Assembly: GCA_951406725.2 (NCBI GenBank)
Contig: OX597823.1
Span: forward strand, 38,336,001 to 38,460,000
Origin: Octopus vulgaris
Taxonomy: Eukaryota
Direction: 5' to 3'
Length of the DNA stretch: 124,000 nucleotides
The notes under the pieces were generated by a model. It saw only the letters and a list, made by a program, of their open reading frames with translations. It ran no database searches and was not told the origin of the DNA. The translations under genes and the position numbers were made by a program. Numbering within the stretch: the first letter of the stretch is position 1; each line of letters begins with the position of its first letter. This document shows positions 22,659 to 116,972 of this stretch, piece after piece.

Positions 22659-23909
22659 TCAGGTCATTCCATAAGTTCTGTCCAATTTTACCTTTTTTAA
22701 AATTCAATGAAATTTAATAGTATTTTAGAATGTCTAATGGAATTAAAAATTATTTTACAGAATAATAGAATTGAAATTTCTTTGATTAAAACCCTTTCTA
22801 ACATGGAAGTATCCAAAGAGCATTTGAGGCACATAATGCTTTATGAGTACAAAAAAGGAAACTCTGCAGCCAAAGCAACTCGAAACATACACTCAGTTTA
22901 TGGGAAAGAATGCTTGAATGAAAGAACTTACAGAAGATGGTTTGCAAAATTCAGAAGTGGAGATTTCAGCCTTGAAGATGAAGATCGAACAGGACGTCCA
23001 GTTGAATTTGATGATAAGCTCCTTGAGGCATTACTTAAAGAAAATCTTGCATTATCAGTTGAAGAATTGGCAATAAAGCTTAGTTCAAACCATACAACTG
23101 TTCATTGTCATCTTCAGCAACTTAGAAAGGTTCCTAAACTTGGAAAACGGGTGCCTCATGAATTGTCCGAAAGTAACTGCAAATCCTGAGTTGACATCTG
23201 CTCTTCTCTCCATTCTCACAAACTCATTTTACCTTTTTTGGATAGACTTGTGACTGGCGATGAAATATGGATCTTCTATCGAAATGTTAAATGTCATAAA
23301 AAGTGGCTTGGTAAAAGGGAAAAAGCTCAACCACAACCGAGAAGGGAACTTCATGGGAAAAAGGTTCTTCTCTCTATCTAGTGGGATTGCAAAGGAGTAA
23401 TTTGCTTTGAATTGTTACCACCTAATGCAACAATCAATGATCAAGTCTACTGTTAGCAATTAGAGCATTTGAACCAAGCTTTGAAGAAAAAAAGACCTGC
23501 TTTAGTGAATCAAAAAGAAGTGATCTTTCATCAGAAAATGTGCGACCCTGCACCACAAAGATCACATCACAGAAGATCAAAGAGCTTGGTTTGGAAAAAA
23601 CTCCTCATCCACCTTAATCTCCTAACCTTGCTCCTTCAGACTACTTACTATTTGTTTCATAGTTTACAGAATCATTTGGGGGACATAACTTTTGCAAGCC
23701 AGGAGGAGGTCAAAACTGACATTTCAGAGTTCTTTGCTTTGAAAGCAAAAGAGTTTTACGTTGATGGGATTAAAAAGCTTGTAAATAGACAGAAGGAAGT
23801 CATAGATAATCAGGGAAAGTACACTGATGATTAAATTTCAGCTAAATATAACATTTGATCACTTGTTTTCATTATTCAAAATTCGGACAGAACTTATGGG
23901 ATGACCTAA
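22659..23909 (+). mobile_element. Full-length degenerate mariner transposon
   Basis: TIRs tcaggtcattccataagttctgtcc / ggacagaacttatgggatgacctaa flanked by TA; transposase from ATG 22803 (RRWFAKFRSGDFSLEDEDRTGRP, VTGDE) with stops and frameshifts. Confidence 0.92.
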
Positions 23910-72398: not shown

Positions 72399-73956
<1,558 letters not shown>

Positions 73957-74046
73957 TTGATTGATTGATTGATTGATTCTAGTTTCAGCTTATGAGCTGT
74001 GGCCATGCTGGGGCACCGCCATTTGGTGTTGCTACTTGGTTTCACT

Positions 74047-77043
74047 TCATGGAGGCTTTCTAGCAACTGCTATTTGGTGCATGAGAGAGTTCGATGCAGC
74101 TGCCCTCATCTGCCCCTCCTGCCGTGAAGTTGGTTCATCTGGGACACCTGACAGGAAGAGATCCAGCTTCATTTTAAAGACATCTGTATCCACCCCATGC
74201 AGGTCTCTCAGGTTCTTCGGGAGGATATTGAAGAGCTGTGGGCCTCGGAAGCCCAGGCTATCACAGAATCTTGTCCTACATCTTGATGGCAGGTTTGGAG
74301 TCCTAGGCACCACGCAGTGGCGCCCAGTTCTGGCATTTGCGTAACTCTCGATGCCAAAGTTCAGGACACTTCCCTCCAGGATCTTCCAGATGTATATTAT
74401 GGCATATCTTTCCCGCCTACGCTCCAGGGAATATAATTTTAATCTCTTGAGTCTTTCCCAGTAGCTTACATTCTGCATAGAGGCTATCTTCTTTGTGTAG
74501 CTTCGTTGGATCGCCTCAAGTTCTGTGATCAACTTGACACTGGATGGTGACCATAGCTGAGAGCAATAGTCAAAGTGGCTTAGGACAAGTGTCTTCCAGA
74601 GGACCATCATGGTTTCTTGTTCTCTTGTTCTAAAGGTTCTAAGAATCCATCCAGCCAGCCGTCTACATTTCATTGTCAGTTTAGCAACATGTACATGAAA
74701 GGTCGCGTCATCACTCATGTGAATACCCAGGTCACGCACTGATTGTGCCTCTGGGATTGCAATCCCTCCGGGTCCAGTGTATTCATTGGGTATTGCATTC
74801 AGTTTTGCATGCTGATAGTATAAAGCTTGAAACTTTCCAGCATTGAACTGCATGCTATTCTTTTCAGCCCACTTGTATATTTCGTCCAGCTCACATTGCA
74901 GGTGTTTAGTGTCCTCAGGGTTCTGTATTGCCTGTGAAACTTTTGTATCATCTGCATAACTTGTGATCGTGGCTCTCTGCGTGGCTGAGGGCATGTCTGA
75001 GAGGGCCATTATGAACAGTAGTGGTCCCAGAACAGTGCCCTGCGGAACACCGCTCACTATTTGTGTGTTAATGGAGGTGGCCCCATTGGCTACTACCACC
75101 TGACTTCTATCCTTCAGAAAGTCATGAAGCCATTCTCCCAGTTTTCCAACTATGTTGAGATCACGCAGTTTGTGACATATCATTCCATGATCGACTTTAT
75201 CAAAGGCCTTTGCAAAGTCGAGATATATCACTTCCACATTTGAGTGGTTGAGCAGCCGTTTCAGCACCCAGTCATAGTGTTGTAGGAGCTGAGTTAAACA
75301 GCTTCTCCCTGGTCGGAAACCATGTTGGGTGTCGGGCAGCAAGTCATTCTCTTCAAGGAAGGTGATCAGCTTCCTTCTGACTATTCGTTCCATGACCTTG
75401 CTGATGTGTGAGGTCAGAGAGATAGGTCTATAGTTCTTGGCTTCCGCTCTGCTACCTCCTTTATGAATGGGGCATATTTTACCTTCCTTCAGTTTTCCTG
75501 GAAGTTTGCCAGCTGCAAGGAAGCTCTGAAAGAGGAACTGCAGTGGTCTTGCTAGGACTCTCTTACATGCTTTTAGGAGGATTGCCGGGAATCCATCGGG
75601 GCCAGTAGCTGAGTCTGTTTTCATTTCATCTATAGCCTTGGTTACATCGTCTTCCTTTATATCGATGTAATCTATCGTCGCCGCCTCTGATTTTATATCT
75701 GCAGTGGTAAAAAAGTCAGTTGGATTGGTGATTTGGAGATGCCCAAGGGGTGGAGTGAAAACACTCTTGAATTGCTCATTCAGTATTTCACTTACCCTCA
75801 TTGGTTTTCCTGTAAGTGTGCCATCCTTTTCGAGGAGTGGCCCTATTCTACAGTGCACTGTAGCTGTTTCTTTGGCATACCTGTAGAAAGCTCTGGGGTT
75901 AGATTTTATGTTTTCTATAGCCCAGGCTTCTTTGTCTGCTCTTTCTTTTTCATGGGAGAGTTGCAGACATTTTTCGATTTCCAACAGTTTTATTTTTAGG
76001 CGGGACTTTTCACTGCTTTCAATCTGTTTGTTTAGGCGATTTGAAAATTTCGTACGCCGTCTCATTAAAATTTTCCTCTCTCTGGGGATTTTGTTCTTGT
76101 GTACAGTGGCCTTTCTCTCTGGGACACATTTGTAGCATATGGCTTGCATTACAGACATGAATTGTTGAAGTTTCACGTCGATGTCTGGCGAGGAGAGACA
76201 TTTAGGCCAGTTTTGTTTGAGGATCTCTTTCTCAATTTGTTTCCAGTTTGCCTTATGGTAGTTCAAGCTGGAAAGATTTTGAGGGTTTCTTGTAGGCTGC
76301 ATGTCCGTGCTCTCTTTTGGCCCGTACATGGTCAGCTCTATCATGTTGTGATCCGAGAGTAGTGTCGGTGTCACTTTCACATTATGGATGAGATCCATGT
76401 CATTTGTGAAGCAGAGATCCAGTGTGTTACCTGCCCTGGTTGGTTGGAGTATTACCTGCTCCATGTACAGGGTGTTGATGAGGTTCAGGAGGGACCTCGC
76501 CTGTCCTCGTTCACATCTTGTCATTCCTGGGAGAGAAAGGCCCTCGGGCCATCTGACATTGGGCAGATTGAAGTCTCCCATAAGAAGCACACCTATGTGT
76601 TGTTCTAATGTGGTTAGAATTTCTTCTATTTTTATAAGGCAGTCTTCAAACTTGCCCACATGGCTTGGGGCATCTGGAGGGCGATATGTAGCACACACAA
76701 CTACATCAAGTTGCCTAATATGTACAATTAGTGTGTCACACACCGAGTTTGAGTATGACAAGAGGACCTGGGGTGTGAGGTCCTCACGGATGTACATAGC
76801 AACACCTCCATGACTCCTTTCTTTCCTGTCGGTCCGTAGTACAGCATACTGTGGTATGTGTAACTCCGCATCTGCTATGTCCGGTTTCAGGTGCGTTTCT
76901 GTAAGTGCTATGCATAAGGCTTGATTGCATGCAACAAAGTCTCTCAGGAACGGGATCTTTGTCCTGTTACTGAGTGTTTGCAGTCCTCTGATGTTCAGTA
77001 GGAGTATCGAGGTGAGGTGTACGTTGTTGCCGGCGGTGTCCAT
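74047..77043 (-). CDS. LINE ORF2: APE endonuclease plus reverse transcriptase (frame open from GTG 77151, first ATG 77043)
   Basis: LNIRGL, LTETHL, GGVAMY, YRPP, MGDFN, SDHN; [27 protein letters not shown]. Confidence 0.95.
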
Positions 77044-77906
77044 CCTGTGTCTGTTTGCTGTGGTGGTCTGGTATATAGTGGGTAGTCCCACCTGCGGGCT
77101 TGGGTTTGATGAAGCCAGGTCAGCTGCTGTACAATCTTTTGTGCCATGCACAAAAAAGATTGTTGCTCAGCAGCTGCTCTTTCGACAACATCATGTTGGC
77201 TGTTTGTGGCGCGCACAACATCTGCGTACCTCCGCTTTGGGGCAGGTGGTGCGTGGTCCATCCCTTTTCTTTGTGTTGATGGTTTGTCCATCTGCCTCGT
77301 GTCTCTGTGGCAGGGTCCCCGATGTGCAAAGCGGCAGCCTGCACCTTCCTTTCCATGCCAGCAGGAACCTCTCAGGTAGAACATACACACCCGTGTGCGC
77401 TGTTTGGTTCCATCCTTTGCGGTTCCACTTCTATTTCTGGTTGTTTCACTCTTTGGTCCTGCTTGAGCTTTTTCTTTTCCTTTAGCTCTTCCAGTCCTTC
77501 TTTTAGTTCTTCTTCCTCCCTCTACCTCTTCACCGGGTTCTCCGTCTCCATGGCCCTTGCTGCCGGTTGGAGAACTTGCACCTGGGTTCACTTCCCGGGC
77601 AGGTTTCTCATTCAAAACCTCCTCCCGGGCGTCCACCAGGTGGGGGTGACTTCTTTCATCGTCTCCATTCTTGCCATCTTTGCCCCGCTCGTTCTCAAAG
77701 ATGGCATCAAGTGCGCCAATGTGCGACCGTACAAGCGCATATGAGCGCACGAATTCCTGTCTCTTTCGCTCCATCTGAGCCGCTGTCCTCTTGTAGCCTC
77801 TGCTCTTCAGCGCAGCCGCAATCACCTCGCTAGGGCTATCTCCGCCGGCGCACTCCCATGCTCGTACGAATAAATCCAGCTCGTCACGTCTCCATGCTCT
77901 GGACAT
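76995..77906 (-). CDS. LINE ORF1, 303 aa: Myb/SANT-like N-terminus, charged linker, CCCH zinc finger
   Basis: WRRDELDLFVRAW...IAAALKSRGYKRTAAQMERK; CMFYLRGSCWHGKEGAGCRFAH. Confidence 0.85.
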   Translation of the reverse strand: MSRAWRRDELDLFVRAWECAGGDSPSEVIAAALKSRGYKRTAAQMERKRQEFVRSYALVRSHIGALDAIFENERGKDGKNGDDERSHPHLVDAREEVLNEKPAREVNPGASSPTGSKGHGDGEPGEEVEGGRRTKRRTGRAKGKEKAQAGPKSETTRNRSGTAKDGTKQRTRVCMFYLRGSCWHGKEGAGCRFAHRGPCHRDTRQMDKPSTQRKGMDHAPPAPKRRYADVVRATNSQHDVVERAAAEQQSFLCMAQKIVQQLTWLHQTQARRWDYPLYTRPPQQTDTGWTPPATTYTSPRYSY

Positions 77907-77959: not shown

Positions 77960-79260
77960 GGAAGATATTAAGGCTAATTAGAAGATAGAGTACTTGAAAA
78001 AGAAATATTAACAATATTAAAGTTTGTGTAAAAACGTTATTTGGGTAAAAACGTTATTTAATCTTAAGGCTAATTAGGGGATAGAGTATCTGAAAATGTA
78101 TTAGCAATATTAATATTATATTAGAGTGTGGATAAAAACGTTGTTTAATCTTAAGGCTAATTAGGAGATAGAGTATCTGAAAATATATTAGCAATATTAA
78201 TATTATATTAGAGTGTGGGTAAAAAAAACGTTATTTAATCTTAAGGCTAATTTGGAGATAGAGTATCTGAAAATATATTAGCAATATTAATATTATATTA
78301 GAGTGTGGGTAATATTAAACGTTATTTAATTTAATCTTAAGGCTAATTAGAAGACAGAGTATCTGAAAAATTATATATACAATATTAAGCAATATTAACC
78401 GTTATTTAATTTAATCTTAAGGCTAATTAGACGTTATTAATATTAAACGTTATTTAATTTAATCTTAAGGCTAATTAGAAGATAGAGTATCTGAAAATAT
78501 ATTAGCAATATTAATATTATATTAGAGTGTGGATAAAAACGTTATTTAATCTTAAGGCTAATCAGGAGATAGAGTATCTGAAAATATATTAGCAATGTTA
78601 ATATTATATTAGAGTGTGGGTAATATTAAACGTTATTTAATTTAATCTTAAGGCTAATTAGAAGATAGAGTATCTGAAGAATTATTAACAATATTAAAAC
78701 AATATTAAACGTTATTTAATTTAATCTTAAGGCTAATTAACAATAATTATTAACAATATTAAACAATATTAAACGTTATTTAATTTAATCCTAAGGCTAA
78801 TTAACAATAATTATTAACAATATTAAACAATATTAAACGTTATTTAATTTAATCTTAAGGCTAATTAACAGTAATTATTAACAATATTAAACAATATTAA
78901 ACGTTATTTAATTTAATCCTAAGGCTAATTAACAATAATTATTAACAATATTAAACGTTATTTAATTTAATCCTAAGGCTAATTAGACGTTATTAATATT
79001 AAACGTTATTTAATTTAATCTTAGGGCTAATTAGAAGATAGAGTATCTGAAAAATTATTAACAATATTAAAACAATATTAAACGTTATTTAATTTAATCT
79101 TAAGGCTAATTAACAATAATTATTAACAATATTAAACAATATTAAACGTTATTTAATTTAATCCTAAGGCTAATTTGACGGTATCAATATTAAACGTTAT
79201 TTAATTTAATCTTAAGGCTAATTAGAAGATAGAGTATCTGGAAAATTATTATATCGAGAA
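77960..79260. repeat. AT-rich tandem array of variable 40-90 bp units upstream of LINE ORF1
   Basis: Core aatcttaaggctaatt recurs about 18 times (counted by eye). Confidence 0.9.
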
Positions 79261-79696: not shown

Positions 79697-80301
<605 letters not shown>

Positions 80302-80396
80302 TAAAATATTATTAGAGACAAAACCACTATTTTGCAAAACAAACAAGGAAAGACTTAATCAATACATAAAATTTTAATAAATAGTCAAAAAAACCG

Positions 80397-80439
80397 CCAC
80401 TACAATCGTTTCTTGTCTTGATCGACAATCTTCAGGTGG
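80397..80439 (-). ncRNA. Minimal type I hammerhead ribozyme, intact core
   Basis: ccac-CUGAAGA-uuguc-gaucaa-gacaa-GAAAC-gauu-GUA-gugg. Confidence 0.85.
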
Positions 80440-83400
80440 ACTTCAATCTAAAATATCAATATTTTAAAATATACAAATAATAATTTTAAAATAATTAAAG
80501 TATGAATGAAAAAATATAAATATATAATCCATATATAACCTATATATAATCCATATATAATCAATATATAAACAATATATAAACTAAAATAAACCTATCA
80601 ACAATTAAATATAAAATATAAAATATATAATATAAAACAAAACAAAAAAATAATAATAATAATATAATAATAAACTATATATACACCCATACACATATAC
80701 CTAATTATATATAACCATATCTAACTACATACACTAAACCACACACCTATATATATATCCCTATACATACACATAAAAACGTCTAGGCAACTATAAATAA
80801 ATAAAATAGCTAAATACTTCAACACAATACTTATTCATACTCCCACACACACACACATACAACCCACATTCACGCTCTAGAAAACGGACATCACTCAAAA
80901 TTATGAACGGAGAAATAGAATAAATGGAATTAAAAATTATATTCACTTGGTAAAACGAACACTACTTAAAAATTATGAATGAAACAATGCAATAAAACAA
81001 CAGACATCGCAAATATACACAAATTACTACGAATTCCTTAACAAACCTACCATGATAAACCAAAACTCACAAAAACATATAATGATAAAATCTCCCTTTA
81101 CTAATCTATAACATACCTATATAGCAATCCCCCTAACCTAAACATTCACACACAAATACACACACGTAAACCACACACCCACGACATATACAAATACCCA
81201 CACCACTTACACATACCAATACATACATATAAACCTCAACATATACTCCAAAAACCCACTCAACCCCACACAGACAAATAAACACAAAAATTATGAATGG
81301 ATTCTTTTATAAAACTACCATGATAAGCTAAAACTCACAAAACAGAAATGATAAAACCTCCCTTTACTAAACACTATAACATACTTATATAGCAATCCCT
81401 TTAACCTATACATTCACACACAAAAACACACAAGTAAACCACACACCCATAACAAATACAAACACCCACCCCACTCACACACACCCACAAGTACATATAA
81501 ACCTCAACATATACACGAACAAAATTACTTTACCAAGGAACTTAACATATGTATAAAAAGTATAACCGCTCCGGAAACGAACATCTCTAAATTAATGAAT
81601 GGAGAAATGGAATAAATGGAATTAAAAATAATATTCACGTGGCAAAACGAACACCACTCAAAAATTATGAATGAAACAATGCAATAAAACAACCAACATC
81701 GAAAATAGACAAATTACCACGAATTCCCTAAAAAAACCATGATAAACCAAAACTCTTAAAAACATATAACGATAAAATCTCCCTTTGCTAAACTCTATAA
81801 CAAACCTATATAGCAATCCCCCTAACCTAAACATTCACACACAAATACACACACGTAAACCACAGACCCACGACATATACACATACCTATACTAACTTAT
81901 AAACCTCAATATACACCAAAATCCACTCCCTCCACACACAGACAAATTAACACATACATCCCAAAACCTAAATAACAAACCCATATACACATTCACACAC
82001 AAACACACACACAGGCAAAACACACACACACAACAGATACATATACTCCCTCACATATACGCATATACATACTCACTAAACTCGATATATACAACAATAT
82101 TTACACACCCACACTCATACAGATAAATAAATTATACAACTAAAAACTCACATACAATCTCATATACATAAACACTCCTATGAAAACAACATTAAATACA
82201 TCGTAATTAACCAGAATATCAAAAATAACAATATGACATAAGGATAAATAAAATACATACTTACAAGTCAGTTTCAAATTATAAAGTGAAATTAAATTCT
82301 TAGCCGTTAAAAAAATCAAACCAAAATTACGTTACCATAGAAATAACTTATGTAAAAAAAGAATACGCGTCATGGAAAGTAAACGTCATTTAAAATTATG
82401 AATGGAGAAAAAGAATAAATGGAACTAAAAACTATATCCACGTGGCAAACCAACACTACTTAAAAAAATTTATTATGAATGGATTCTTTAAAAAACTACC
82501 ATGAAAAATCATTATATACATTTATGAGCTTTAGCTCACCTTAGCAGCTCTAACAAACAACTTGCAGCAACCCAAACCTATTCTCGATGCCTACCTCACT
82601 ACTACACTATTCCACTCACAATTCCAAGCAACGCTAGTCCACCACCCGGTTACAATTCCCAACTCCACCCATTCATTCACAATTTCAACGACGTTCGCCT
82701 CCACAGCGCTACATATAAGCCTCAACATATACACCGGAGATTCACATCCGTGCGAATGGGTGAGATTAATTCCTTAACAAACCTACCAAGATAAACCAAA
82801 ACTCACAAAACATATAATGATAAAATCTCCCTTTACTAAACTCTATAACATACCTATATAGCAATCCCCCTAACCTAAACATTCACACACAAATACACAC
82901 ACGTAAACCACACACCCACGACATATAGATACCCACACCACTTACACATACCAATACATACATATAAACCTCAACATATACTCCAAAACCCACTCAACCC
83001 CACACATACAAATAAACACAAAAATTATGAATGGATTCTTTTATAAAACTACCATGATAAGCTAAAACTCACAAAACAGAAATAATAAAACCTCCCTTTA
83101 CTAAACACTATAACATACTTATATAGCAATCCCTTTAACCTATACATTCACACACAAAAAAACACACGTAAACCACACACCCATAACAAATACAAACACC
83201 CACCCCACTCACACACACCCACAAGTACAAATAAGCCTCAACATATACACCAAACAAAATTACTTTACCAAGGAACTTAACATATGTATAAAAAATATAA
83301 CCGCTCTGGAAACGAACATCTCTAAATTAATGAATGGAGAAATGGAATAAATGGAATTAAAAATAATATTCACGTGGCAAAACGAACACCACTCAAAAAT

Positions 83401-84815
83401 TATGAATGAAACAATGTAATAAAACAACCAACATCGAAAATAGACAAATTACCACGAATTCCCTAAAAAAACCATGATAAACCAAATCTCTTAAAACCTA
83501 CAACGATAAATCTCCCTTTGCTAAACTCTATAACAAACCTATATAGCAATCCCCCTAACCTAAACATTCACACACAAATACACACACTTAAACCACAGAC
83601 CCACGACATATACACATACCTATACTAACTTATAAACCTCAATATACACCAAAACCCACTCCCTCCACACACAGACAAATTAACACATACATCCCAAAAC
83701 CTAAATAACAAACCCATATACACATTCACACACAAACACACACACACGCAAAACACACACACACAACAGATACATATACTCCCTCACATATACGCATATA
83801 CATACTCACTAAACTCGATATATACAACAATATTTACACACCCACACTCATACAGATAAATAAATTATACAACTAAAAACTCACACACAATCTCATATAC
83901 ATAAACACTCCTATGAAAACAACATTAAATACATCGTAATTAACCGGAATATCAAAAATAACAATATGACATAAGGATAAATAAAAAACATACTTACAAG
84001 TCAGTTTCAAATTATGAAGTGAAATTAAATTCTTAGCCGTTAAAAGAATCAAACCAAAATTACGTTACCATAGAAATAACTTATGTAAAAAAAGAATACG
84101 CGCCATGGAAAGTAAACGTCATTTAAAATTATGAATGGAGAAAAGGAATAAATGGAACTAAAAACTATATCCACGTGGCAAACCAACACTACTTAAAAAA
84201 ATTTATTATGAATGGATTCTTTAAAAAAACTACCATGAAAAATCATTATATACATTTATGAGCTTTAGCTCACCTTAGCAGCTCTAACAAACAACTTGCA
84301 GCAACCCAACCCATTCTCGATGCCTACCTCACTACTACACTATTCCACTCACAATTTTGAGTGATGTCCGTTTTCTAGAGCGTGAATGTGGGTTGTATGT
84401 GTGTGTGTGTGGGAGTATGAATAAGTATTGTGTTGAAGTATTTAGCTATTTTATTTATTTATAGTTGCCTAGACGTTTTTATGTGTATGTATAGGGATAT
84501 ATATATAGGTGTGTGGTTTAGTGTATGTAGTTAGATATGGTTATATATAATTAGGTATATGTGTATGGGTGTATATATAGTTTATTATTATATTATTATT
84601 ATTATTTTTTTGTTTTGTTTTATATTTTATATTTTATATTTTATATTTAATTGTTGATAGGTTTATTTTAGTTTATATATTGTTTATATATTGATTATAT
84701 ATGGATTATATATAGGTTATATATGGATTATATATTTATATTTTTTCATTCATACTTTAATTATTTTAAAATTATTATTTGTATATTTTAAAATATTGAT
84801 ATTTTAGATTGAAGT

Positions 84816-84858
84816 CCACCTGAAGATTGTCGATCAAGACAAGAAACGATTGTAGTGG
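84816..84858 (+). ncRNA. Minimal type I hammerhead ribozyme, identical to 80397-80439; predicted cleavage after 84854
   Basis: Stem I ccac/gtgg, core CTGAAGA at 84820-84826, stem II ttgtc/gacaa, GAAAC at 84843-84847, GTA at 84852-84854. Confidence 0.85.
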
Positions 84859-85033
84859 CGGTTTTTTTGACTATTTATTAAAATTTTATGTATTGATTAA
84901 GTCTTTCCTTGTTTGTTTTGCAAAATAGTGGTTTTGTCTCTAATAATATTTTATAATATTTTACTATAAAATTGGATTTAATCCTAAATCTGATTTTTTT
85001 CCCTGTAAATTTGGATTTATTCCCTAATATTTA

Positions 85034-85626
<593 letters not shown>

Positions 85627-85888
85627 CTTTGATACTTTGATAGGTTTCGGCCATTATTGGCCCAGGCCATGTCTAACTTAATAGCACCACCTGGTGAAGT
85701 CTTTCAAATCAGAATTTGGGCACTATGGCCCACTCAAGTAGAGAGTTATTGTTTACAGAGACATATCCGGGTGTAGGGGGTTTATCCGGGATTTCTTGAA
85801 GGAATCTGTCCAAAGACTTCTTGAACCCTATAGGGTCAGTTTCTGTTTTAATGTGTTTTGGTGTAATGTTAAAGAGAGCGGGGGATAT
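85627..85888 (-). mobile_element. 3'-terminal fragment of a different CR1-group LINE between microsatellites
   Basis: [35 protein letters not shown] resembles the ORF2 C-terminus [10 protein letters not shown]...[12 protein letters not shown]. Confidence 0.8.
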
Positions 85889-86656
<768 letters not shown>

Positions 86657-89600
86657 GTATATAAACTTGTTCCTTCAATCAAAGTATTTAAAATGTTCAA
86701 GACGTGAGATTTTGAAATATATAAGTTTGCAATATCCTATTGTAAAGTATCTTAACCACGGTTATAGCTAACCTCTAATACTTTGTCTTCTTGATTAGTT
86801 AGCTGCAACAAAATATTTTCTTTGAAATTTCTAAATTTAAGTCTTGTCAAGGTCTAGTTAAATGTATACTATAATTTATATGACAGTCATCTGTATCTTT
86901 GCTGCAGATGAACACATTCTCAAACTACACCTACTTTCTTAAAAAGAATATCTTAATGTAATTTATGCTGGTCTTTTCCTGAACAAAAAATGGGATGGCC
87001 ATGACTTGGTTTCTTTTCATCCTTGGCCTCTTTAACCAGGATTGGCTTGGAGCTAAGCAACAACAAACAAATCCTTCTGTTGTAGAAAATTTTTTTTATT
87101 TATTGAAGAACAAAAAAAATTTTTTTAATTCATCTGTTAGTGCTTAGCAAATTAATAAATCTAAAGAAATTCTGAATAATTCCTATATTTTAATTTTTGA
87201 TTTAATCAATTTTTTTTTTACATAGAGATTACATTTTAAAAATTGATATATAATTTCATATTGATGTTTCAGTTTTTCATACATTATTTTTGCATCTTAT
87301 ATCTATTAGTTTAAAAATCAAACGAATCTATGGATATATTCTATAGAAGATTATAACAACAAAATGAAACAAATACTGGTAACACATCAATAACTTAATG
87401 TCCAATCTTGGTGCCATAAGAATGTTAACTATGCTAATTGGTCTATCCAGTTTACTTTAACCTCTAATATTAGTGAACTTATAAACAATGTGTTAGTGAA
87501 TATATAAAGTTGGTACGCAACTGTTCACTCCAGAGAGAGTGGAAAGGTCCATTTCTCTCTTTTTGTGTCTGCACACACATACTGTATAGATGAATTGTTA
87601 TAACACAGTGTTGGCTAACAAAATATCTATAAATATGATCTATATTACACTATAGCAATGTAATAAAACATTGTTTATGCATCTGTAATTATCTTTTTTG
87701 CAAAAGACTATTATTGTCTGTCTGCCTGTCTCTCCTTCTCTCTTTCTCTCTCTCTTTCACACACAAACACATGCATACATATGAACACACTTAGCCTTTC
87801 TGTGAAGGACTTTGCATTTTAATTGTGGTCAGAAACTAATCTCTCAGCTTCAAATTTTCTTTAACTCTCTTTAAAGCTACTAATGTAATAAAAGAACATT
87901 ATATATGATTAAAATCCAAATTCATCACAGAATTTGATTGATATCACTATATTTTATATGCAACAAAATGTTACAAAAATGTCTCACTTCACCTAAATTA
88001 GAAAATTTGATACTTTGGTACATTGAGCTTAATTTGAGTTTAAGATGACTCAGAGTCATGCTAGCCTAGTTCTTGTTATGGATAGCTTATTGCAGGCTAA
88101 CATGTAATTAATACACACCTCTATTTGAGATTTTGCAGTGGCAATGATATAACTTTTTCACTTCATCTAGTCAAGTAATCCTAAAATATAATCTTTCATT
88201 CAAACACACCACCATACATGCAAAAACATTCACATACTCTCATGCACTTGGAATGCGGATAAATATTGAATGTACTTGTAATGAATACATTATTGTATTT
88301 TTTTGCAATGTTCTCAATAATTGTCAGTGTTTGAATTGTTCCATATTTATAGCTATGATAAAATATTTATGCACTTAACACTATCTTGTAATCCTTTACT
88401 AGATTAATATCTGTACACACCAATGCTCTTCATTAATATTAGCAAAGTTGCCAAGAAAACATTTAGTCATACATGATTTCATAGTTTTTATGAATTTATA
88501 TAATATGGTATATTGTATGATGAACAAAGCGTGATATCTATGGCTAATATAATATTGTTGAAACCAATGTTATTAGAATGAAGTGATATAAATAAAATTA
88601 TAATAACAATAGTTTTGACCTTTATAAGACCTTCAGATGTAGAGTATGACTTTATTCTTTTATTTTTTTTACTAGAATTGTATGTAGGAATTCAGTGCTG
88701 CATAAACAATCTAATGTGGGTATATATGTCTTAAAGCTAGTAATAATGTATTGTGTAAACTGAAAACTAGATTGTTTCATATACATGAACCAAAATCTGT
88801 TGACAAAACAGTTGGGAAGACCCTAAGCTTTACCAATGATGAAAATATAATTAAAAGTTGTGATTTGTTTATTTTATTATATTCTTTTTGAAAGATTAGA
88901 AACCTTTATCTCTGTTTTGCATTGCTTTAAATACACAATGTATTCTGAATAAAGCTTGCATTATGAAAAACAAAATGATATAACTTACTTAGTTTTTACA
89001 TCATTACAGGTAAGATAGGTTGTTTATTCAGTAGACCATCAGACATTGCTCTCCCAGTGCTAGTAAACCCATTCTCCTTTTCTCTATATAATTTTCAGCA
89101 TTGGGTGCCTGCCTGGTTAGCATTAGAAAGGGCATCTGACTATAAAACAATGTCACACCATATTTGTTCAAGCATGGAGAAATGGAGATAAAATAAAGGC
89201 ATGAATCTCTGAACTATCCACTTCATCCCTCCATCTTCTTCATTGTCATTCTTTGTTTCTTTTGTGTTGCATCGGAATGAAGTGTGTCATCTTTATCATG
89301 AACCTGTTGTAATGCATCCTCTGGATGCATCCAGTTTTATGAACTTAATCCTGATATGTAGTTTTGTTTTGTTTTTGGATCTATTTCATTGTTTTATGAT
89401 TCTTCTGCACTATTCCACACTTAATTTATTTGTGACTATATTGAGTTGTTTATAGCCTGTTTGTTTGGTTCCAACTAAAAACGATACAAACAGAGAAAGA
89501 AAAATAAATAATACAGCAAAATACTTCAGATTGGCAAGCCTTCAGGGGAGTAATTACTATTTTTAGAAGCATAATGCGACCAAGAGTTGTTTAGATGAAG

Positions 89601-98652: not shown

Positions 98653-99292
98653 GTAGGTTATTTTCATTACAAATTAAAAACATTACAAATGAAAAATATC
98701 TCTCATTATACTAAACTTCTTTCTAATTATATTTTCTCAATCATTAATAAGATCTGCTCTTTTCATTTGTCAATTAAAAATAAAATTCGAAATACTTATG
98801 TAAAATTTGTTATTTTTGTGACAATATTTCAATATTCACTCATCATATGAAAGCCATCTGTTTTTGTATTTTTTAATCAGCCAGACAGGTTAGAATATAC
98901 ATACATGCATAAATATGTATATATATATATATATGATTGTCCAAGGGCATTTTTACAGCTATATCTGATAACGGTTATTTTCAATACTTTTCTCGCTGGA
99001 TTATGTGTTTGTTTCTCTTTTGGTCATCAGCAATTTTATTTTTGATCTTTTATATAAATGAAGATATTTCCTCCGTCTGGCTGTTTTTCTCTCTACAAAA
99101 CGGAAAGTTACATTATAGAACAGTTATTTTTACGAGTTGTATTTATTTATTTTTTCATCACCCGATGAGATACATCTGAACCAGTTATTGAGTGTCCCAC
99201 ACAAAAGGAATTGATGCTAGATGTGTTGAAACAATTGTCGTGATTAATAATAAATTCTCATATATTCCATCTTCTGTCTTTCATTTGTTATG

Positions 99293-99323
<31 letters not shown>

Positions 99324-99554
99324 GTATTTATATGTATGTATTTATATTTATATTTATATGTATGTATTTATATTTATATGTATGTATTTATGTGTATATG
99401 TAGGTATATATATGTATTTATATGTATATGCATGTATATTTATATGTATATGCATGTATATATGTATATATATGTATATATATATATATATGTATGTATG
99501 TATGTATGTATATATGTATATGTATGTATGTATATATGTATATATGTATATGTA

Positions 99555-99690
99555 AAGGTCTTAGTTGCCAATTTTGTACAAGACATTGTAGATCTTTAGC
99601 TGGGCTAAAAAGTCACATTCGATCACAGCACCAGTGACAGTTAAGCTTCGTGCAATGGCCATACTCGATAACGAGGGGGCAGCCATAAAA
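99555..99690 (+). mobile_element. RTE-clade LINE extreme 3' fragment inside a TATG/TA microsatellite complex
   Basis: [23 protein letters not shown]-terminal zinc finger-like motif. Confidence 0.6.
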
Positions 99691-99720
99691 AAAAAATATA
99701 TATATGTATGTATATATATA

Positions 99721-99755
<35 letters not shown>

Positions 99756-100079
99756 GACTGGCCAGACTGGAGCAATCTCAAGAATAATATATATGTATAT
99801 ATATGTATGTATATATATATATATATGCATATATATGTATGTATATATATATGCATATATGTATATATATATATGTATATATATGTATGTATGTATACAT
99901 ATCTATATATATATATATGTTTATATATATATATGTGTATATGTATGTATATATATGTATGTATGTATATATATATATATATTTGTATATGTATGTATAT
100001 ATATATATATTTGTATATGTATGTATATATATATTTGTATGTATATATATGTATATGTATATGTATATATATGTACATA

Positions 100080-100139
<60 letters not shown>

Positions 100140-100141
<2 letters not shown>

Positions 100142-100560
100142 TATTGTTCTGGCTGTTGCCCATGCAACATCGATATTCTTCCCTGAGTTTGTGAAATTTT
100201 TGTAAGGCTTCACTTCCATGCGCGCCAGCTTAATTCAATTCATACTTGGTTGAAAGACACCTGTTGTTATGTCCTGTTAGTATTTTTATTGTATTTATAT
100301 TTGTGTGATATTGTCTGTTTTTTTCTGTCCTTGTTTTTGTATATATTCGCTGCTTTCTTCCAAGGAATCTAATGCTCTTGGCTTAGTTTTTCCTTGGGGC
100401 TGGCAAGACTGGAGCAATCTCAAGAATAATCAGCTGAAATTGCGAGGATAATCTGGTGCTTGACTGAGGAGTGACCCGTCCTTGTTTTCTTTGTATCGTC
100501 TATCTGGATGTTTTGTTGTCATTTTTTGTATCACCTAGCTGTCCGGATGTTTTGCGTTAT
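100140..100560 (+). mobile_element. Penelope-like terminal repeat fragment, same family as 71784-72337
   Basis: Shared ccaaggaatctaatgctctt...ggagcaatctc...cagctgaaattgc; flanked by TA-rich microsatellites. Confidence 0.6.
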
Positions 100561-113082: not shown

Positions 113083-116000
113083 TGATTGATTGATTGATTG
113101 ATTGATTCTAGTTTCAGCTTATGAGCTGTGGCCATGCTGGGGCACCGCCATTTGGTGTTGCTACTTGGTTTCACTTCATGGAGGCTTTCTAGCAACTGCT
113201 ATTTGGTGCATGAGAGAGTTCGATGCAGCTGCCCTCATCTGCCCCTCCTGCCGTGAAGTTGGTTCATCTGGGACACCTGACAGGAAGAGATCCAGCTCCA
113301 TTTTAAAGACATTTGTATCCACCCCATGCAGGTCTCTCAGGTTCTTCGGGAGGATATTGAAGAGCTGTGGGCCTCGGAAGCCCAGGCTATCACAGAATCT
113401 TGTCCTACATCTTGATGGCAGGTTTGGAGTCCTAGGCACCACGCAGTGGCGCCCAGTTCTGGCATTTGCGTAACTCTCGATGCCAAAGTTCAGGACACTT
113501 CCCTCCAGGATCTTCCAGATGTATATTATGGCATATCTTTCCCGCCTACGCTCCAGGGAATATAATTTTAATCTCTGAGTCTTTCCCAGTAGCTTACATT
113601 CTGCATAGAGGCTATCTTCTTTGTGTAGCTTCGTTGGATCGCCTCAAGTTCTGTGATCAACTTGACACTGGATGGTGACCATAGCTGAGAGCAATAGTCA
113701 AAGTGGCTTAGGACAAGTGTCTTCCAGAGGACCATCATGGTTTCTTGTTCTCTTGTTCTAAAGGTTCTAAGAATCCATCCAGCCAGCCGTCTACATTTCA
113801 TTGTCAGTTTAGCAACATGTACATGAAAGGTCGCGTCATCACTCATGTGAATACCAAGGTCACGCACTGATTGTGCCTCTGGGATTGCAATCCCTCCGGG
113901 TCCAGTGTATTCATTGGGTATTGCATTCAGTTTTGCATGCTGATAGTATAAAGCTTGAAACTTTCCAGCATTGAACTGCATGCTATTCTTTTCAGCCCAC
114001 TTGTATATTTCGTCCAGCTCACATTGCAGGTGTTTAGTGTCCTCAGGGTTCTGTATTGCCTGTGAGACTTTTGTATCATCTGCATAACTTGTGATCGTGG
114101 CTCTCTGCGTGGCTGAGGGCATGTCTGAGAGGGCCATTATGAACAGTAGTGGTCCCAGAACAGTGCCCTGCGGAACACCGCTCACTATTTGTGTGTTAAT
114201 GGAGGTGGCCCCATTGGCTACTACCACCTGACTTCTATCCTTCAGAAAGTCATGAAGCCATTCTCCCAGTTTTCCAACTATGTTGAGATCACGCAGTTTG
114301 TGACATATCATTCCATGATCGACTTTATCAAAGGCCTTTGCAAAGTCGAGATATATCACTTCCACATTTGAGTGGTTGAGCAGCCGTTTCAGCACCCAGT
114401 CATAGTGTTGTAGGAGCTGAGTTAAACAGCTTCTCCCTGGTCGGAAACCATGTTGGGTGTCGGGCAGCAGGTCATTCTCTTCAAGGAAGGTGATCAGCTT
114501 CCTTCTGACTATTCGTTCCATGACCTTGCTGATGTGTGAGGTCAGAGAGATAGGTCTATAGTTCTTGGCTTCCGCTCTGCTACCTCCTTTATGAATGGGG
114601 CATATTTTACCTTCCTTCAGTTTTCCTGGAAGTTTGCCAGCTGCAAGGAAGCTCTGAAAGAGGAACTGCAGTGGTCTTGCTAGGACTCTCTTACATGCTT
114701 TTAGGAGGATTGCCGGGAATCCATCGGGGCCAGAAGCTGAGTCTGTTTTCATTTCATCTATAGCCTTGGTTACATCGTCTTCCTTTATATCGATGTAATC
114801 TATCGTCGCCGCCTCTGATTTTATATCTGCAGTGGTAAAAAAGTCAGTTGGATTGGTGATTTGGAGATGCCCAAGGGGTGGAGTGAAAACACTCTTGAAT
114901 TGCTCATTCAGTATTTCACTTACCCTCATTGGTTTTCCTGTAAGTGTGCCATCCTTTTCAAGGAGTGGCCCTATTCTACAGTGCACTGTAGCTGTTTCTT
115001 TGGCATACCTGTAGAAAGCTCTGGGGTTAGATTTTATGTTTTCTATAGCCCAGGCTTCTTTGTCTGCTCTTTCTTTTTCATGGGAGAGTTGCAGACATTT
115101 TTCGATTTCCAACAGTTTTATTTTTAGGCGGGACTTTTCACTACTTTCAATCTGTTTGTTTAGGCGATTTGAAAATTTCGTACACCGTCTCATTAAAATT
115201 TTCCTCTCTCTGGGGATTTTGTTGTTGTGTACAGTGGCCTTTCTCTCTGGGACACATTTGTAGCATATGGCTTGCATTACAGACATGAATTGTTGAAGTT
115301 TCACATCGATGTCTGGCGAGGAGAGACATTCAGGCCAGTTTTGTTTGAGGATCTCTTTTCAATTTGTTTCCAGTTTGCCTTATGGTAGTTCAAGCTGGAA
115401 AGATTTTGAGGGTTTCTTGTAGGCTGCATGTCCGTGCTCTCTTTTGGCCCGTACATGGTCAGCTCTATCATGTTGTGATCCGAGAGTAGTGTCGGTGTCA
115501 CTTTCACATTATGGATGAGATCCATGTCATTTGTGAAGCAGAGATCCAGTGTGTTACCTGCCCTGGTTGGTTGGAGTATTACCTGCTCCATGTACAGGGT
115601 GTTGATGAGGTTCAGGAGGGACCTCGCCTGTCCTCGTTCACATCTTGTCATTCCTGGGAGAGAAAGGCCCTCGGGCCATCTGACATTGGGCAGATTGAAG
115701 TCTCCCATAAGAAGCACACCTATGTGTTGTTCTAATGTGGTTAGAATTTCTTCTATTTTTATAAGGCAGTCTTCGAACTTGCCCACATGGCTTGGGGCAT
115801 CTGGAGGGCGATATGTAGCACACACAACTACATCAAGTTGCCTAATATGTACAATTAGTGTGTCACACACCGAGTTTGAGTATGACAAGAGGACCTGGGG
115901 TGTGAGGTCCTCACGGATGTACATAGCAACACCTCCATGACTCCTTTCTTTCCTGTCGGTCCGTAGTACAGCATACTGTGGTATGTGTAACTCCGCATCT

Positions 116001-116170
116001 GCTATGTCCGGTTTCAGGTGCGTTTCTGTAAGTGCTATGCATAAGGCTTGATTGCATGCAACAAAGTCTCTCAGGAACGGGATCTTTGTCCTGTTACTGA
116101 GTGTTTGCAGTCCTCTGATGTTCAGTAGGAGTATCGAGGTGAGGTGTACGTTGTTGCCGGCGGTGTCCAT
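113083..116170 (-). mobile_element. Near-identical 5'-truncated copy of the 73957 LINE, ORF2 only, with two 1-nt deletions
   Basis: Colinear with 73957-77043; frameshifts at about 113576 and 115358; (AATC)n tail. Confidence 0.95.
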
Positions 116171-116972
116171 GAGTTGCATAAGAATCAGCAACCTTAAATG
116201 TTAAACTGACACAAGAAAATGCTCATGAGACTCAGTAACCAGACTACTAGTAGTGAATCCTGAGACTCAGTAACTATGTTAAACTGACTGACTACTAACA
116301 AATGAGTCCATAACTTGTTATATCTGTATGTTATTGAGTAACATCAGGCTCAAATTACTTCAACAATCATAAGGGAAAGTCATAACTCTACCTAGCCATG
116401 TCAGCATTAAAAAACAAATCAGTGTGTCTGTTTATGCACACAAATAATATTTGATATAATTTTATAGATTGAATTATAAGACAAGTCCTGCCTTAGGGTT
116501 AACTTATCATATGAACTATGTTTAAATGTCGAGAAGATTATAGAATATTGATATTTCATTATTTAATCCAACTTTTATCTATTAAGCCATCCTTAATTCT
116601 CTTTCTTAATCAGTTTTCATTGATTATTATTTTTGTTGTTGTTATTATTTGGATTGTTAGAATTATTAGAACATTTGACAAAATATCTTGCAATATTGCT
116701 TCCTGAGTTTACATCTCATTGAGACCAACTTCCATGATTGATAAAATTTTGTACCAGTCAAATACTAATCCATTAACTCAGCCAACTCCATTTCCACAAA
116801 ATTTCAGGCCTTGAATCTATGTTTGAAAAAATTGTTATTGTTGTTGGTAAGGTAGTAAGCTAGCAGAATTGTTAATGTGCTTCACAAAATGTTTAGTGGG
116901 ATTTCTTCCAGTTCTAGCAGAAGTACCAACCTTCAAGCAGTTTCTTGCTACTCATTATGTATTAAGGAGGTA

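What the first reader, a model, noticed from the sequence alone, without database searches (positions are those of the whole stretch)
80302..84954. 4.65 kb non-coding fold-back element carrying two intact hammerhead ribozymes
Seen in sequence: about 600 bp near-identical terminal inverted repeats, each holding the same ccac-CUGAAGA-stem II-GAAAC-gauu-GUA-gugg motif. The interior is A/C-skewed with only one short ORF (71 aa), and (TA)n tracts lie on both sides. Established: minimal type I hammerheads with a self-complementary stem III occur in Penelope-like element pLTRs and animal retrozymes and act as dimers. Here ACGAUUGU can self-pair using two G-U pairs. Inference: this is a young, non-autonomous, ribozyme-bearing retroelement much larger than the few-hundred-nt retrozyme monomers, possibly an undescribed family.
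Basis: partly seen in the sequence, partly recalled or inferred. Interest (0 to 1): 0.85.

Follow-up and report, generated by a model that had tools for sequence, protein, structure and literature searches.

The report
Penelope-type hammerhead retroelement insertion, head-to-head
A young 4.7-kb non-coding insert in a (TA)n microsatellite of an animal (probably octopod) genome has the layout of a Penelope-like retroelement insertion, two copies joined head to head with a minimal hammerhead motif near each outward 3' end, so it is an ordinary if tidy example of a known kind, not a new ribozyme element.

Summary
Arms 80300-80902 and 84353-84955 are inverted copies with 1 mismatch in 603 nt. Each carries the same 43-nt hammerhead-like motif, on opposite strands, and (TA)n lies on both sides. 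The motif has the full catalytic core and fits a minimal-hammerhead descriptor that hit none of 300 shuffled windows (about 1e-3 expected per window). However, no Rfam hammerhead model detects it, its helix II closes with U-A rather than the conserved G10.1-C11.1, and in its native flanks the hammerhead helices are rarely predicted.

The fold-back is asymmetric. The left arm runs on into the body's repeat units. The right arm cuts a unit at a microhomology junction. The locus is therefore a 4.05-kb minus-strand copy plus an inverted 0.6-kb 5'-truncated copy, with both 3' ends outward and an extra 77 bp at one end only. That is the published Penelope-like (PLE) insertion architecture.

Because the two motifs are on opposite strands, no transcript carries two of them. 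Retrozyme-style excision or circular RNA from this locus is excluded.

There is no RT/GIY-YIG ORF in the element and none was found in the window. No eukaryotic genome was searchable, so copy number, an autonomous partner and cleavage remain untested. Best reading: a non-autonomous PLE-mobilised element, a new member of a known kind, of low to moderate interest.

The parts
79701..80299 (.). Left flank: (AT)n microsatellite, about 300 units; presumed target tract
   Evidence: TRF, period 2, 98% matches; sequence read
80300..80902 (-). Left arm: the 3'-terminal 603 nt of the main (minus-strand) copy. It is contiguous with the body. The 3' end of the element is at about 80300.
   Evidence: Inverted repeat I1. 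One mismatch to the right arm. The inner edge lies inside a repeat unit that continues past 80902 and aligns with four interior units at 84% mean column identity.
80397..80439 (-). Minimal type I hammerhead-like motif. Helix I CCAC/GUGG; core CUGAAGA; helix II UUGUC-GAUCAA-GACAA; GAAA; helix III A-U and C-G with loop GAUU; H17 = A. Predicted cleavage between 80401 and 80400.
   Evidence: Exact match. Descriptor hit versus shuffles. Two isolated 43-mers cofold into the double hammerhead at -21.4 kcal/mol. No Rfam hit.
80903..84352 (-). Non-coding body, G/T-rich in the hammerhead-sense (minus) strand. It is an array of about 0.7-0.9-kb units marked by an 87-nt anchor at 80868, 81560, 82363, 83295 and 84096. 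It has no hammerhead core and no ORF above 71 aa.
   Evidence: the repeat finder family D13 and others; self-BLAST; ORF list; composition
81032..82767 (-). First copy of a 1736-bp internal tandem duplication
   Evidence: 81032-82623 aligns to 82768-84356 at 97.7%: 26 mismatches and 11 gap columns
82768..84356 (-). Second copy of the internal duplication, cut short at the junction with the right arm (the 5' end of the main copy)
84349..84356 (.). Head-to-head junction. The body sequence (matching 82616-82623) switches to the reverse complement of the left arm across a shared TCAYAATT microhomology.
   Evidence: Three-way alignment; mismatches at 80903, 80907 and 80908
84353..84955 (+). Right arm: an inverted, 5'-truncated second copy of the 3'-terminal 603 nt, with its 3' end pointing outward (right)
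84816..84858 (+). Second copy of the hammerhead-like motif. Predicted cleavage between 84854 and 84855, 101 nt before the end of the arm.
84956..85026 (+). About 70-77 bp of unique sequence between the right arm and (TA)n, present at this end only. It is either a PLE 'tail' extension or a piece of target DNA.
   Evidence: Unique in the window. It shares only a 12-mer (ATTTAATCCTAA) with the nearby minisatellite. Tails at one end of PLE insertions are described in PMC8557442 and PMC11167929.
85027..86663 (.). Right flank: (AT)n/(AC)n microsatellite
   Evidence: TRF

Best explanation
The locus is one insertion made by Penelope-like-element (PLE) machinery from a non-coding, non-autonomous RNA. 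That RNA has a satellite-like body of about 0.7-0.9-kb units followed by a roughly 600-nt 3' module. The module carries a minimal type I hammerhead motif about 100 nt before the 3' end.

Shown here: the locus consists of a 4.05-kb copy on the minus strand (84352 to 80300) and an inverted 0.6-kb copy of the same 3' end (84353 to 84955). They are joined head to head at a microhomology. Both 3' ends and both hammerhead sense strands point outward. The insert sits in a (TA)n tract and has an extra 77 bp at one end.

Inferred: the PLE endonuclease cut both strands of the AT-rich target. Each 3'-OH then primed reverse transcription from the 3' region of the RNA. One cDNA reached 4 kb and the other 0.6 kb, and repair joined them.

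The hammerhead motif is the pLTR-type ribozyme that such elements inherit. At this locus a transcript of either strand contains one sense motif and one antisense copy. The motif could therefore only trim about 100 nt (or about 180 nt with the tail) off the 3' end, or act in trans as a dimer. It cannot release a unit-length or circular RNA. The arms would instead pair into a 603-bp dsRNA hairpin.
For: 1. Motif: full core (C3-A9, G12-A14, A15.1-U16.1, H17=A), a 4-bp helix I, a 5-bp helix II and a palindromic helix III. These are the traits listed for PLE minimal hammerheads in PMC4209133. It is the only descriptor hit in the window, with 0 hits in 300 shuffles and 1 in 235 Mb of random sequence. 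Two isolated 43-mers fold into the double hammerhead.
2. Asymmetry: the left arm continues into the body units, whereas the right arm truncates a unit at a microhomology.
3. The duplicated part is the 3' end in the hammerhead-sense orientation, and both sense strands face outward. [quoted passage not shown]
4. Both arms end at the same nucleotide, so the element has a defined terminus.
5. (TA)n lies on both sides. Microsatellite and (TA)n insertion bias of PLEs is reported, as is cleavage of AT-rich DNA.
6. Extra unique sequence occurs at one end only, like the PLE tail.
7. In the Anolis PLE, both DNA strands are cleaved and extended. Reverse transcription starts about 85-92 nt downstream of the hammerhead cut site. 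Here the arm ends 101 nt after it.
8. Youth: the arms differ by 1 in 603 nt, and CpG o/e is 0.95 against 0.25 for the window. The internal duplicates differ by 1.6%, so they predate the arm duplication, as expected if they were already in the template.
9. The host is probably an octopod. Active Penelope families are annotated in Octopus vulgaris.
Against: - There is no RT or GIY-YIG ORF in the element. None was found in the 28 longest stop-free segments of the window, where only APE-type LINEs, a zf-RVT fragment and a mariner HTH appear.
- No second copy lies in the 124 kb, and none was found in any reachable collection. Mobility and family membership are therefore inferred from anatomy alone.
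- The motif is not found by any Rfam hammerhead model, even at E<=10 on 96 nt.
- U10.1-A11.1 replaces the G-C pair that PMC4209133 calls highly conserved, and the usual unpaired base after A9 is absent.
- With native flanks, the helix I and II pair probabilities are at most 0.17, and the 76-nt fold is no better than shuffles (z = -0.34).
- The 'tail' is twice the published 30-40 bp. It shares a 12-mer with the neighbouring minisatellite, so it may be target DNA.
- There is no upstream direct pLTR.
Confidence: 0.52

Rival explanations
1. A one-off local rearrangement. A satellite-like sequence lying in a fragile, cruciform-prone (TA)n region underwent an inverted duplication of 0.6 kb through fold-back or template-switch repair. 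The element is not mobile, and the hammerhead-like motif is a chance match or a relic of an old PLE fragment.
For: - There is only one copy in 124 kb and none elsewhere that I could reach.
- The junction has microhomology, which is typical of replication or repair template switching.
- Long palindromic (TA)n tracts flank it.
- About 20 chance descriptor hits are expected per 2.5-Gb genome.
- No Rfam hit.
Against: - The right arm ends at exactly the nucleotide where the left arm meets (TA)n. That would be a coincidence for an arbitrary duplication breakpoint.
- The motif's strand agrees with the 3'-end-outward layout.
- A per-window chance of about 1e-3 for the motif combines with four other PLE-like traits.
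- CpG is not depleted in a CpG-poor genome, which argues for a recent arrival.
Confidence: 0.2
2. A non-autonomous DNA transposon of the long-TIR or foldback kind, moved by a transposase encoded elsewhere. The hammerhead-like motif is incidental.
For: - 603-bp near-perfect terminal inverted repeats.
- TA dinucleotides at both ends could be a TA target duplication.
- The arms contain short tandem sub-repeats of 11 bp.
- Mariner-type sequence is present in the window.
Against: - The inner edges of the arms are not equivalent. One is continuous with the body units and the other is a breakpoint with microhomology.
- No target duplication longer than the palindromic TA can be seen. The 9-bp flanks match at only 6 of 9 positions (sequence).
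- The extra 77 bp occurs at one end only.
- The termini do not resemble Tc1/mariner ends (sequence).
- The motif orientation and its roughly 100-nt distance to the end match the PLE layout.
Confidence: 0.1
3. One reading: a new family of giant retrozyme-like elements whose two hammerheads process the transcript, possibly into circular RNA.
For: The hammerhead core is intact and helix III is self-complementary. The element is non-coding.
Against: - The two motifs are on opposite strands, so any transcript has one ribozyme and its antisense. Excision of a unit between two cleavage sites is impossible.
- The interior units carry no hammerhead core.
- Animal retrozymes are direct tandem repeats of 170-400 nt (PMC7229834).
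- The arms would sequester the motif in a 603-bp duplex.
Confidence: 0.05
4. An assembly artefact: a chimeric or fold-back read, or a collapsed repeat, created the inverted 0.6-kb copy.
For: The arms are almost identical (1/603). The locus lies between unassemblable microsatellites. PMC8557442 notes that such PLE structures often cause assembly problems.
Against: Fold-back read artefacts give full palindromes around a central point, not 0.6-kb arms around 3.4 kb of unique body. The junction has a specific microhomology, and one genuine mismatch distinguishes the arms.
Confidence: 0.08

Closest known systems
Penelope-like element (PLE) insertions with inverted 5'-truncated copies and pLTR hammerheads (Cervera & de la Pena 2014, PMC4209133; Craig et al. 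2021, PMC8557442; Frangieh et al. 2024, PMC11167929)
   Same: - Inverted repeats formed by a 5'-truncated inverted copy abutting the main copy.
- 3' ends pointing outward.
- A minimal type I hammerhead in the repeated terminal region, with a short helix I and a palindromic helix III.
- Insertion into a (TA)n / AT-rich target.
- An extra stretch at one end only.
- The element terminus about 100 nt downstream of the hammerhead cut site (85-92 nt in the Anolis element).
   Different: - No RT/GIY-YIG ORF and no upstream direct pLTR.
- The body is a non-coding array of 0.7-0.9-kb units.
- The helix II closing pair is U-A instead of G-C, and there is no bulged base after A9.
- The end extension is about 77 bp rather than 30-40 bp.
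Non-autonomous PLE derivatives (non-autonomous Chlamys such as MRC1, PMC8557442; animal non-LTR retrozymes as pLTR derivatives, bioRxiv 10.64898/2026.07.22.740005)
   Same: Non-coding, and presumed to share only a 3' module with an autonomous partner. Satellite-like internal repeats and a close link between PLE termini and satellite DNA.
   Different: Retrozymes are direct tandem arrays of 170-400-nt units, each with a hammerhead, and give circular RNAs. Here there is one hammerhead per copy, the units are larger and lack the core, and the two motifs are inverted.
Dual minimal hammerheads on opposite strands in Schistosoma mansoni (PMC4209133)
   Same: Two identical PLE-type minimal hammerhead motifs facing each other on opposite strands, interpreted there as truncated PLE copies.
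   Different: Those pairs lie about 100-700 bp apart. Here they are 4.4 kb apart with a repeat-array body between them.
L1 twin-priming inversions (established knowledge, not tested here)
   Same: Head-to-head retroelement segments joined at a microhomology, produced by priming from both target strands.
   Different: Twin priming inverts a different, adjacent part of the same RNA. Here the same 3' end is present twice. The LINE family in this window ends in (TCAA)n, which this element lacks.
Foldback / long-TIR DNA transposons
   Same: Long, near-perfect inverted termini containing short tandem sub-repeats; non-coding.
   Different: Asymmetric inner junctions, no demonstrable target duplication, an extension at one end only, and a hammerhead motif placed as in PLEs.

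Membership tests
Hammerhead ribozyme (type I, PLE minimal variant) | Conserved catalytic core: C3 U4 G5 A6 N7 G8 A9, G12 A13 A14, A15.1-U16.1, H17 | tested here: met
   CUGAAGA ... GAAA ... U-A, read directly; passes the descriptor
Hammerhead ribozyme (type I, PLE minimal variant) | Three helices around the core: a short open helix I, a helix II hairpin, and a minimal palindromic helix III able to dimerise | tested here: met
   Helix I is 4 bp, helix II is 5 bp with a 6-nt loop, and ACGAUUGU self-pairs at -5.8 kcal/mol. The dimer MFE of two 43-mers is the double hammerhead at -21.4 kcal/mol. In native flanks the helices have probability <=0.17.
Hammerhead ribozyme (type I, PLE minimal variant) | G10.1-C11.1 closing pair and an unpaired base between A9 and 10.1 (reported as highly conserved or consistently present in PLE minimal hammerheads, PMC4209133) | tested here: not met
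   The pair is U10.1-A11.1 and there is no bulged base (sequence; criteria)
Hammerhead ribozyme (type I, PLE minimal variant) | Match to a curated covariance model (Rfam hammerhead families) | tested here: not met
   No hammerhead hit at gathering score, at E<=10 on 4.8 kb or at E<=10 on 96 nt. Minimal PLE variants are known to need relaxed descriptors.
Hammerhead ribozyme (type I, PLE minimal variant) | Conservation with compensatory changes across copies; self-cleavage | not testable with these tools
   The only two copies are identical. No homologous loci were retrievable. Cleavage needs a bench assay.
Penelope-like element (autonomous) | ORF with a telomerase-like RT and a GIY-YIG endonuclease | tested here: not met
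   The longest ORF is 71 aa. Pfam on 28 long stop-free segments of the window gives only APE-LINE RT, zf-RVT and mariner HTH.
PLE-type insertion architecture (autonomous or non-autonomous) | Terminal repeat made of a 5'-truncated copy (direct or inverted) sharing the 3' end, with 3' ends outward when inverted | tested here: met
   definition
PLE-type insertion architecture (autonomous or non-autonomous) | Hammerhead motif inside the repeated terminal region | tested here: met
   The motif lies 101 nt from each outer end, in sense orientation relative to the copy
PLE-type insertion architecture (autonomous or non-autonomous) | Microsatellite / AT-rich target and an optional 30-40-bp tail at one end | tested here: inconclusive
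   (TA)n on both sides is met. The extension at one end is 70-77 bp and may be target DNA.
PLE-type insertion architecture (autonomous or non-autonomous) | Multiple genomic copies with variable 5' truncation and a 3' module shared with an autonomous PLE | not testable with these tools
   No eukaryotic genome collection was available. Indirect protein-level fishing found nothing.
Animal non-LTR retrozymes | Direct tandem repeats of about 170-400 nt, each with a type I hammerhead, giving unit-length linear or circular RNA | tested here: not met
   The two motifs are inverted and 4.4 kb apart. The interior units (692-932 bp) have no hammerhead core. Definition.
TIR / foldback DNA transposon | Equivalent terminal inverted repeats flanked by a target-site duplication | tested here: inconclusive
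   Inverted repeats are present but their inner junctions are not equivalent. Only a palindromic TA could be a duplication. Longer flanks do not match.

The most novel reading that the evidence does not exclude
The locus represents a so far undescribed family of large (over 4 kb) non-coding PLE parasites in cephalopods. A satellite-like array of 0.7-0.9-kb units would ride on a 600-nt hammerhead-bearing 3' module, rather as SVA rides on L1. Its head-to-head insertions would create perfect 0.6-kb hairpin RNAs that feed small-RNA silencing or ADAR hyper-editing in an animal lineage known for heavy RNA editing.
Probability: 0.12. Interest if true: 0.55.

Novelty: new member of a known kind. Interest (0 to 1): 0.3.

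Why it matters
If the reading is right, this is a very young insertion: the arms differ at 1 of 603 nt, and CpG is not yet decayed in a CpG-poor genome. It would come from a hammerhead-carrying, non-autonomous Penelope-dependent element in a probable octopod.

That would indicate recent PLE activity in this genome. It would also give a clean natural example of the two-strand priming that was proposed from in vitro work on an Anolis element, including a junction with microhomology and an extension at one end.

It adds no new kind of ribozyme or element. It also shows why a pair of inverted hammerhead motifs should not be read as a retrozyme, since they never share a transcript.

Tried and rejected
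1. Rfam, three ways: no hammerhead hit. The motif rests on a descriptor, not a curated model.
2. Other copies in the window: BLAST of the element against the 124 kb gave only (CA)n and (TA)n low-complexity hits.
3. Other copies elsewhere, by DNA pattern. Degenerate hammerhead patterns found 0 hits in JGI metagenome contigs, IMG/VR and prokaryote genomes. These collections are not expected to hold cephalopod DNA, so the result is weak.
4. Other copies elsewhere, by protein. I tried fishing through spurious ORFs in the protein collection:
   - ten exact ORFs were not on record;
   - the 71-aa ORF had no candidate;
   - the (TA)n-arm junction ORF gave only (YI)n low-complexity hits.
5. Linked PLE genes: Pfam on 28 stop-free segments of at least 100 aa gave no GIY-YIG and no PLE-type RT.
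6. Source genome: the LINE ORF2 is not on record exactly. Its homologues point to octopods, with Argonauta hians at 58% and an unnamed Logan protein at 87%. The species is not identified.
7. LINE-mobilised element with a (TA)n tail: rejected, because the LINE family here ends in (TCAA)n and shares nothing with the arms.
8. Editing-type mutation bias between the internal duplicates: 16 transitions and 10 transversions, no clear bias. The skew is more simply explained by (CA)n-like content.
9. Supplementary files of the key papers, searched for octopus or PLE hammerhead sequences: none are held as text.


Full report
**What is there**

The region 80300-84955 is bounded by inverted copies of one sequence. 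The repeat finder reports 612-nt arms at 99% complementarity. A base-by-base comparison shows the real arms are 80300-80902 and 84353-84955. They are 603 nt long and differ at one position (80628). The innermost 9 nt of the reported arms are only partial matches.

Each arm holds the identical 43-mer CCACCTGAAGATTGTCGATCAAGACAAGAAACGATTGTAGTGG, at 80397-80439 on the minus strand and at 84816-84858 on the plus strand.

The plus strand of the interior is A 46%, C 26%, G 7%, T 22%. The longest ORF is 71 aa. (AT)300 abuts the left end. An (AT/AC)n tract of 1.6 kb starts about 72 bp beyond the right end.

**Is the hammerhead motif more than chance, and is it 'intact'?**

The motif reads as follows:
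- helix I CCAC/GUGG;
- core CUGAAGA;
- helix II UUGUC-GAUCAA-GACAA;
- GAAA;
- helix III A-U and C-G closing the loop GAUU;
- cleavage after A17 (84854 on the plus strand, 80401 on the minus strand).

All core positions are present. I wrote a descriptor after the minimal-hammerhead definition of Cervera & de la Pena (PMC4209133). It requires helix I of at least 4 bp, CUGANGA, an optional bulge, helix II of 4-8 bp, GAAA, a self-complementary 0-8-nt insert, UH, and the closing strand of helix I. Only the two arm copies match in the window, and none matched in 300 dinucleotide shuffles. There was 1 match in 235 Mb of random sequence with the window's composition. That corresponds to about 1e-3 per window, but about 20 per 2.5-Gb genome. 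Since the two copies are one duplication, they count as one event.

Two isolated 43-mers cofold into the textbook double hammerhead: trans helix I, two helices II and an 8-bp helix III, at -21.4 kcal/mol against -6.5 for each monomer.

Against 'intact':
- No Rfam hammerhead family matches at gathering score, at E<=10 over 4.8 kb, or at E<=10 over 96 nt.
- Helix II closes with U10.1-A11.1 rather than the G10.1-C11.1 pair that PMC4209133 lists as highly conserved. The usual unpaired base after A9 is absent.
- With 10-80 nt of native flank, the helix I and II pairs have probabilities of at most 0.17. The 76-nt segment folds no better than shuffles (z = -0.34).

Published PLE minimal hammerheads cleave poorly in vitro even as dimers. 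In the one reconstituted PLE, cleavage was not needed for insertion. 'Hammerhead-like motif of the PLE minimal type, activity unknown' is what the evidence supports.

**The fold-back is asymmetric**

The interior is an array of units marked by an 87-nt anchor at 80868, 81560, 82363, 83295 and 84096, with spacings of 692, 803, 932 and 801 nt. The stretch 82768-84356 is a 97.7% copy of 81032-82623.

The inner edge of the left arm (80902) lies inside the first anchor. The sequence runs on across it exactly as in the four interior units, at 84% mean column identity. At the right junction the sequence follows the first duplicate copy up to position 84356 (equivalent to 82623). It then switches to the reverse complement of the left arm across a shared TCAYAATT.

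So the left arm and the body form one continuous 4.05-kb unit. The right arm is a separate, inverted 0.6-kb copy of that unit's end. The hammerhead in the left arm is in sense on the minus strand. The long unit is therefore a minus-strand copy whose 3' end is at 80300, and the right arm is a 5'-truncated second copy whose 3' end is at 84955. Both 3' ends and both ribozyme sense strands point outward, and both arms stop at the same nucleotide.

**What this matches**

Craig et al. (PMC8557442) describe PLE insertions as highly 5'-truncated. [quoted passage not shown] They also describe a 30-40-bp tail at one end and a strong bias for microsatellites, (TA)n in Naiads. Hammerheads lie in the repeated termini of the canonical clades.

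Cervera & de la Pena already saw pairs of minimal hammerheads on opposite strands in Schistosoma.

Frangieh et al. (PMC11167929) showed that a purified PLE protein cleaves and extends both strands of an AT-rich target. It starts reverse transcription internally, about 85-92 nt downstream of the hammerhead cut site (the cut site is at +26 of the ORF and the start sites at +111-118). Two start sites explain the tail.

Here the arm ends 101 nt after the predicted cut site. The target is (TA)n, and one end carries an extra 70-77 bp that is unique in the window. The anatomy thus fits a PLE-type insertion made by priming from both target strands, with the two cDNAs joined at a microhomology. This mechanism is inferred, not shown.

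**What it is not**

It is not autonomous. There is no ORF above 71 aa. Pfam scans of the 28 longest stop-free segments of the window found only APE-type LINE RT, a zf-RVT fragment and a mariner HTH, with no GIY-YIG.

It is not a retrozyme. Animal retrozymes are direct tandem repeats of 170-400 nt, each with a hammerhead, and they yield unit-length and circular RNAs (PMC7229834). Here the motifs are inverted, so any transcript contains one ribozyme and its antisense. No segment can be excised between two cuts, and the interior units have no hammerhead core. The arms would form a 603-bp duplex that sequesters the motif.

The LINE family next door ends in (TCAA)n and shares nothing with the arms, so LINE mobilisation is not indicated.

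**Age and origin**

The arms differ at 1 of 603 positions. The internal 1.6-kb duplicates differ at 26 positions plus 11 gap columns, about 1.6%. The internal duplication therefore predates the arm duplication, as expected if it was already present in the template RNA. An earlier in-situ duplication is not excluded.

CpG o/e is 0.95 in the element against 0.25 in the window, which is consistent with a recent arrival in a methylated, CpG-depleted genome.

The window is animal DNA. Its intact LINE ORF2 has its best named relative in Argonauta hians (58%), and an 87% match in an unnamed sequencing-run assembly. The host is probably an octopod. Octopus vulgaris is reported to hold 31 young Penelope-like families (PMC13282606).

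**What could not be tested**

None of the collections I could search holds eukaryotic genomes. The hammerhead pattern found nothing in metagenome, viral or prokaryote contigs. Attempts to find other copies through spurious ORFs in the large protein collection failed.

Copy number, shared boundaries, an autonomous partner, covariation and cleavage all remain open. For that reason the best explanation stands at about 0.5. The remaining weight goes to:
- a one-off inverted duplication at a fragile (TA)n tract (0.2);
- a long-TIR DNA transposon (0.1);
- an assembly artefact (0.08);
- the giant-retrozyme reading (0.05).

**Verdict**

The fold-back is the known head-to-head PLE insertion form, the retrozyme analogy fails on strand geometry, and 'intact ribozyme' and 'undescribed family' are unproven. 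This is a new member of a known kind, with interest of about 0.3.

Noticed in passing
window 72408-77906: An apparently intact APE+RT LINE on the minus strand. ORF2 is 74047-77151 (1034 aa). An ORF1-like 303-aa ORF at 76995-77906 has a weak Torus/zf-CCCH match. The element ends in (TCAA)n and is followed by (AT)146 and (AC)630. The best named relative is in Argonauta hians (58%), which suggests an octopod host.
   Followed up: partly
window 113100-116191 and 1301-3859: A second copy of the same LINE, split into two ORFs (113568-115304 and 115301-116191), has an identical 3' UTR and (TCAA)n tail but no (TA)n after it. A third RT/endonuclease remnant lies at 1301-3859.
   Followed up: partly
window 13614-13659 (+): A second hammerhead-like core: GACAGT-CTGATGA-13 nt-GAAA-C-TTCAAA-G-TC|ACTGTC. 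It has a perfect 6-bp helix I and a plausible helix III but no workable helix II. It lies 0.6 kb downstream of a zf-RVT ORF (12487-13038). It is probably chance or a decayed motif.
   Followed up: no
window 78047-79226 and 84956-85032: A 64-90-bp minisatellite lies just left of the (TA)n tract. Its unit shares ATTTAATCCTAA (about 20 of 25 nt around it) with the 77-bp unique stretch right of the element. That stretch may therefore be old target DNA rather than a PLE tail.
   Followed up: partly
window 80912-84343 versus the whole window: CpG observed/expected is 0.95 inside the element but 0.25 for the window. The element has escaped the CpG depletion of its surroundings, either because it is young or because it is unmethylated.
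   Followed up: no
window 22707-23189 (+): An ORF with a Mos1-type HTH_48 domain, a remnant of a mariner-family transposase.
   Followed up: no
window 72408-73957, 79701-80303, 85027-86663, about 99200-100200: Unusually long dinucleotide microsatellites, (AC)n and (AT)n of 0.3-1.6 kb, make up about 3% of the window. Two retroelement insertions (the LINE and this element) abut them.
   Followed up: no
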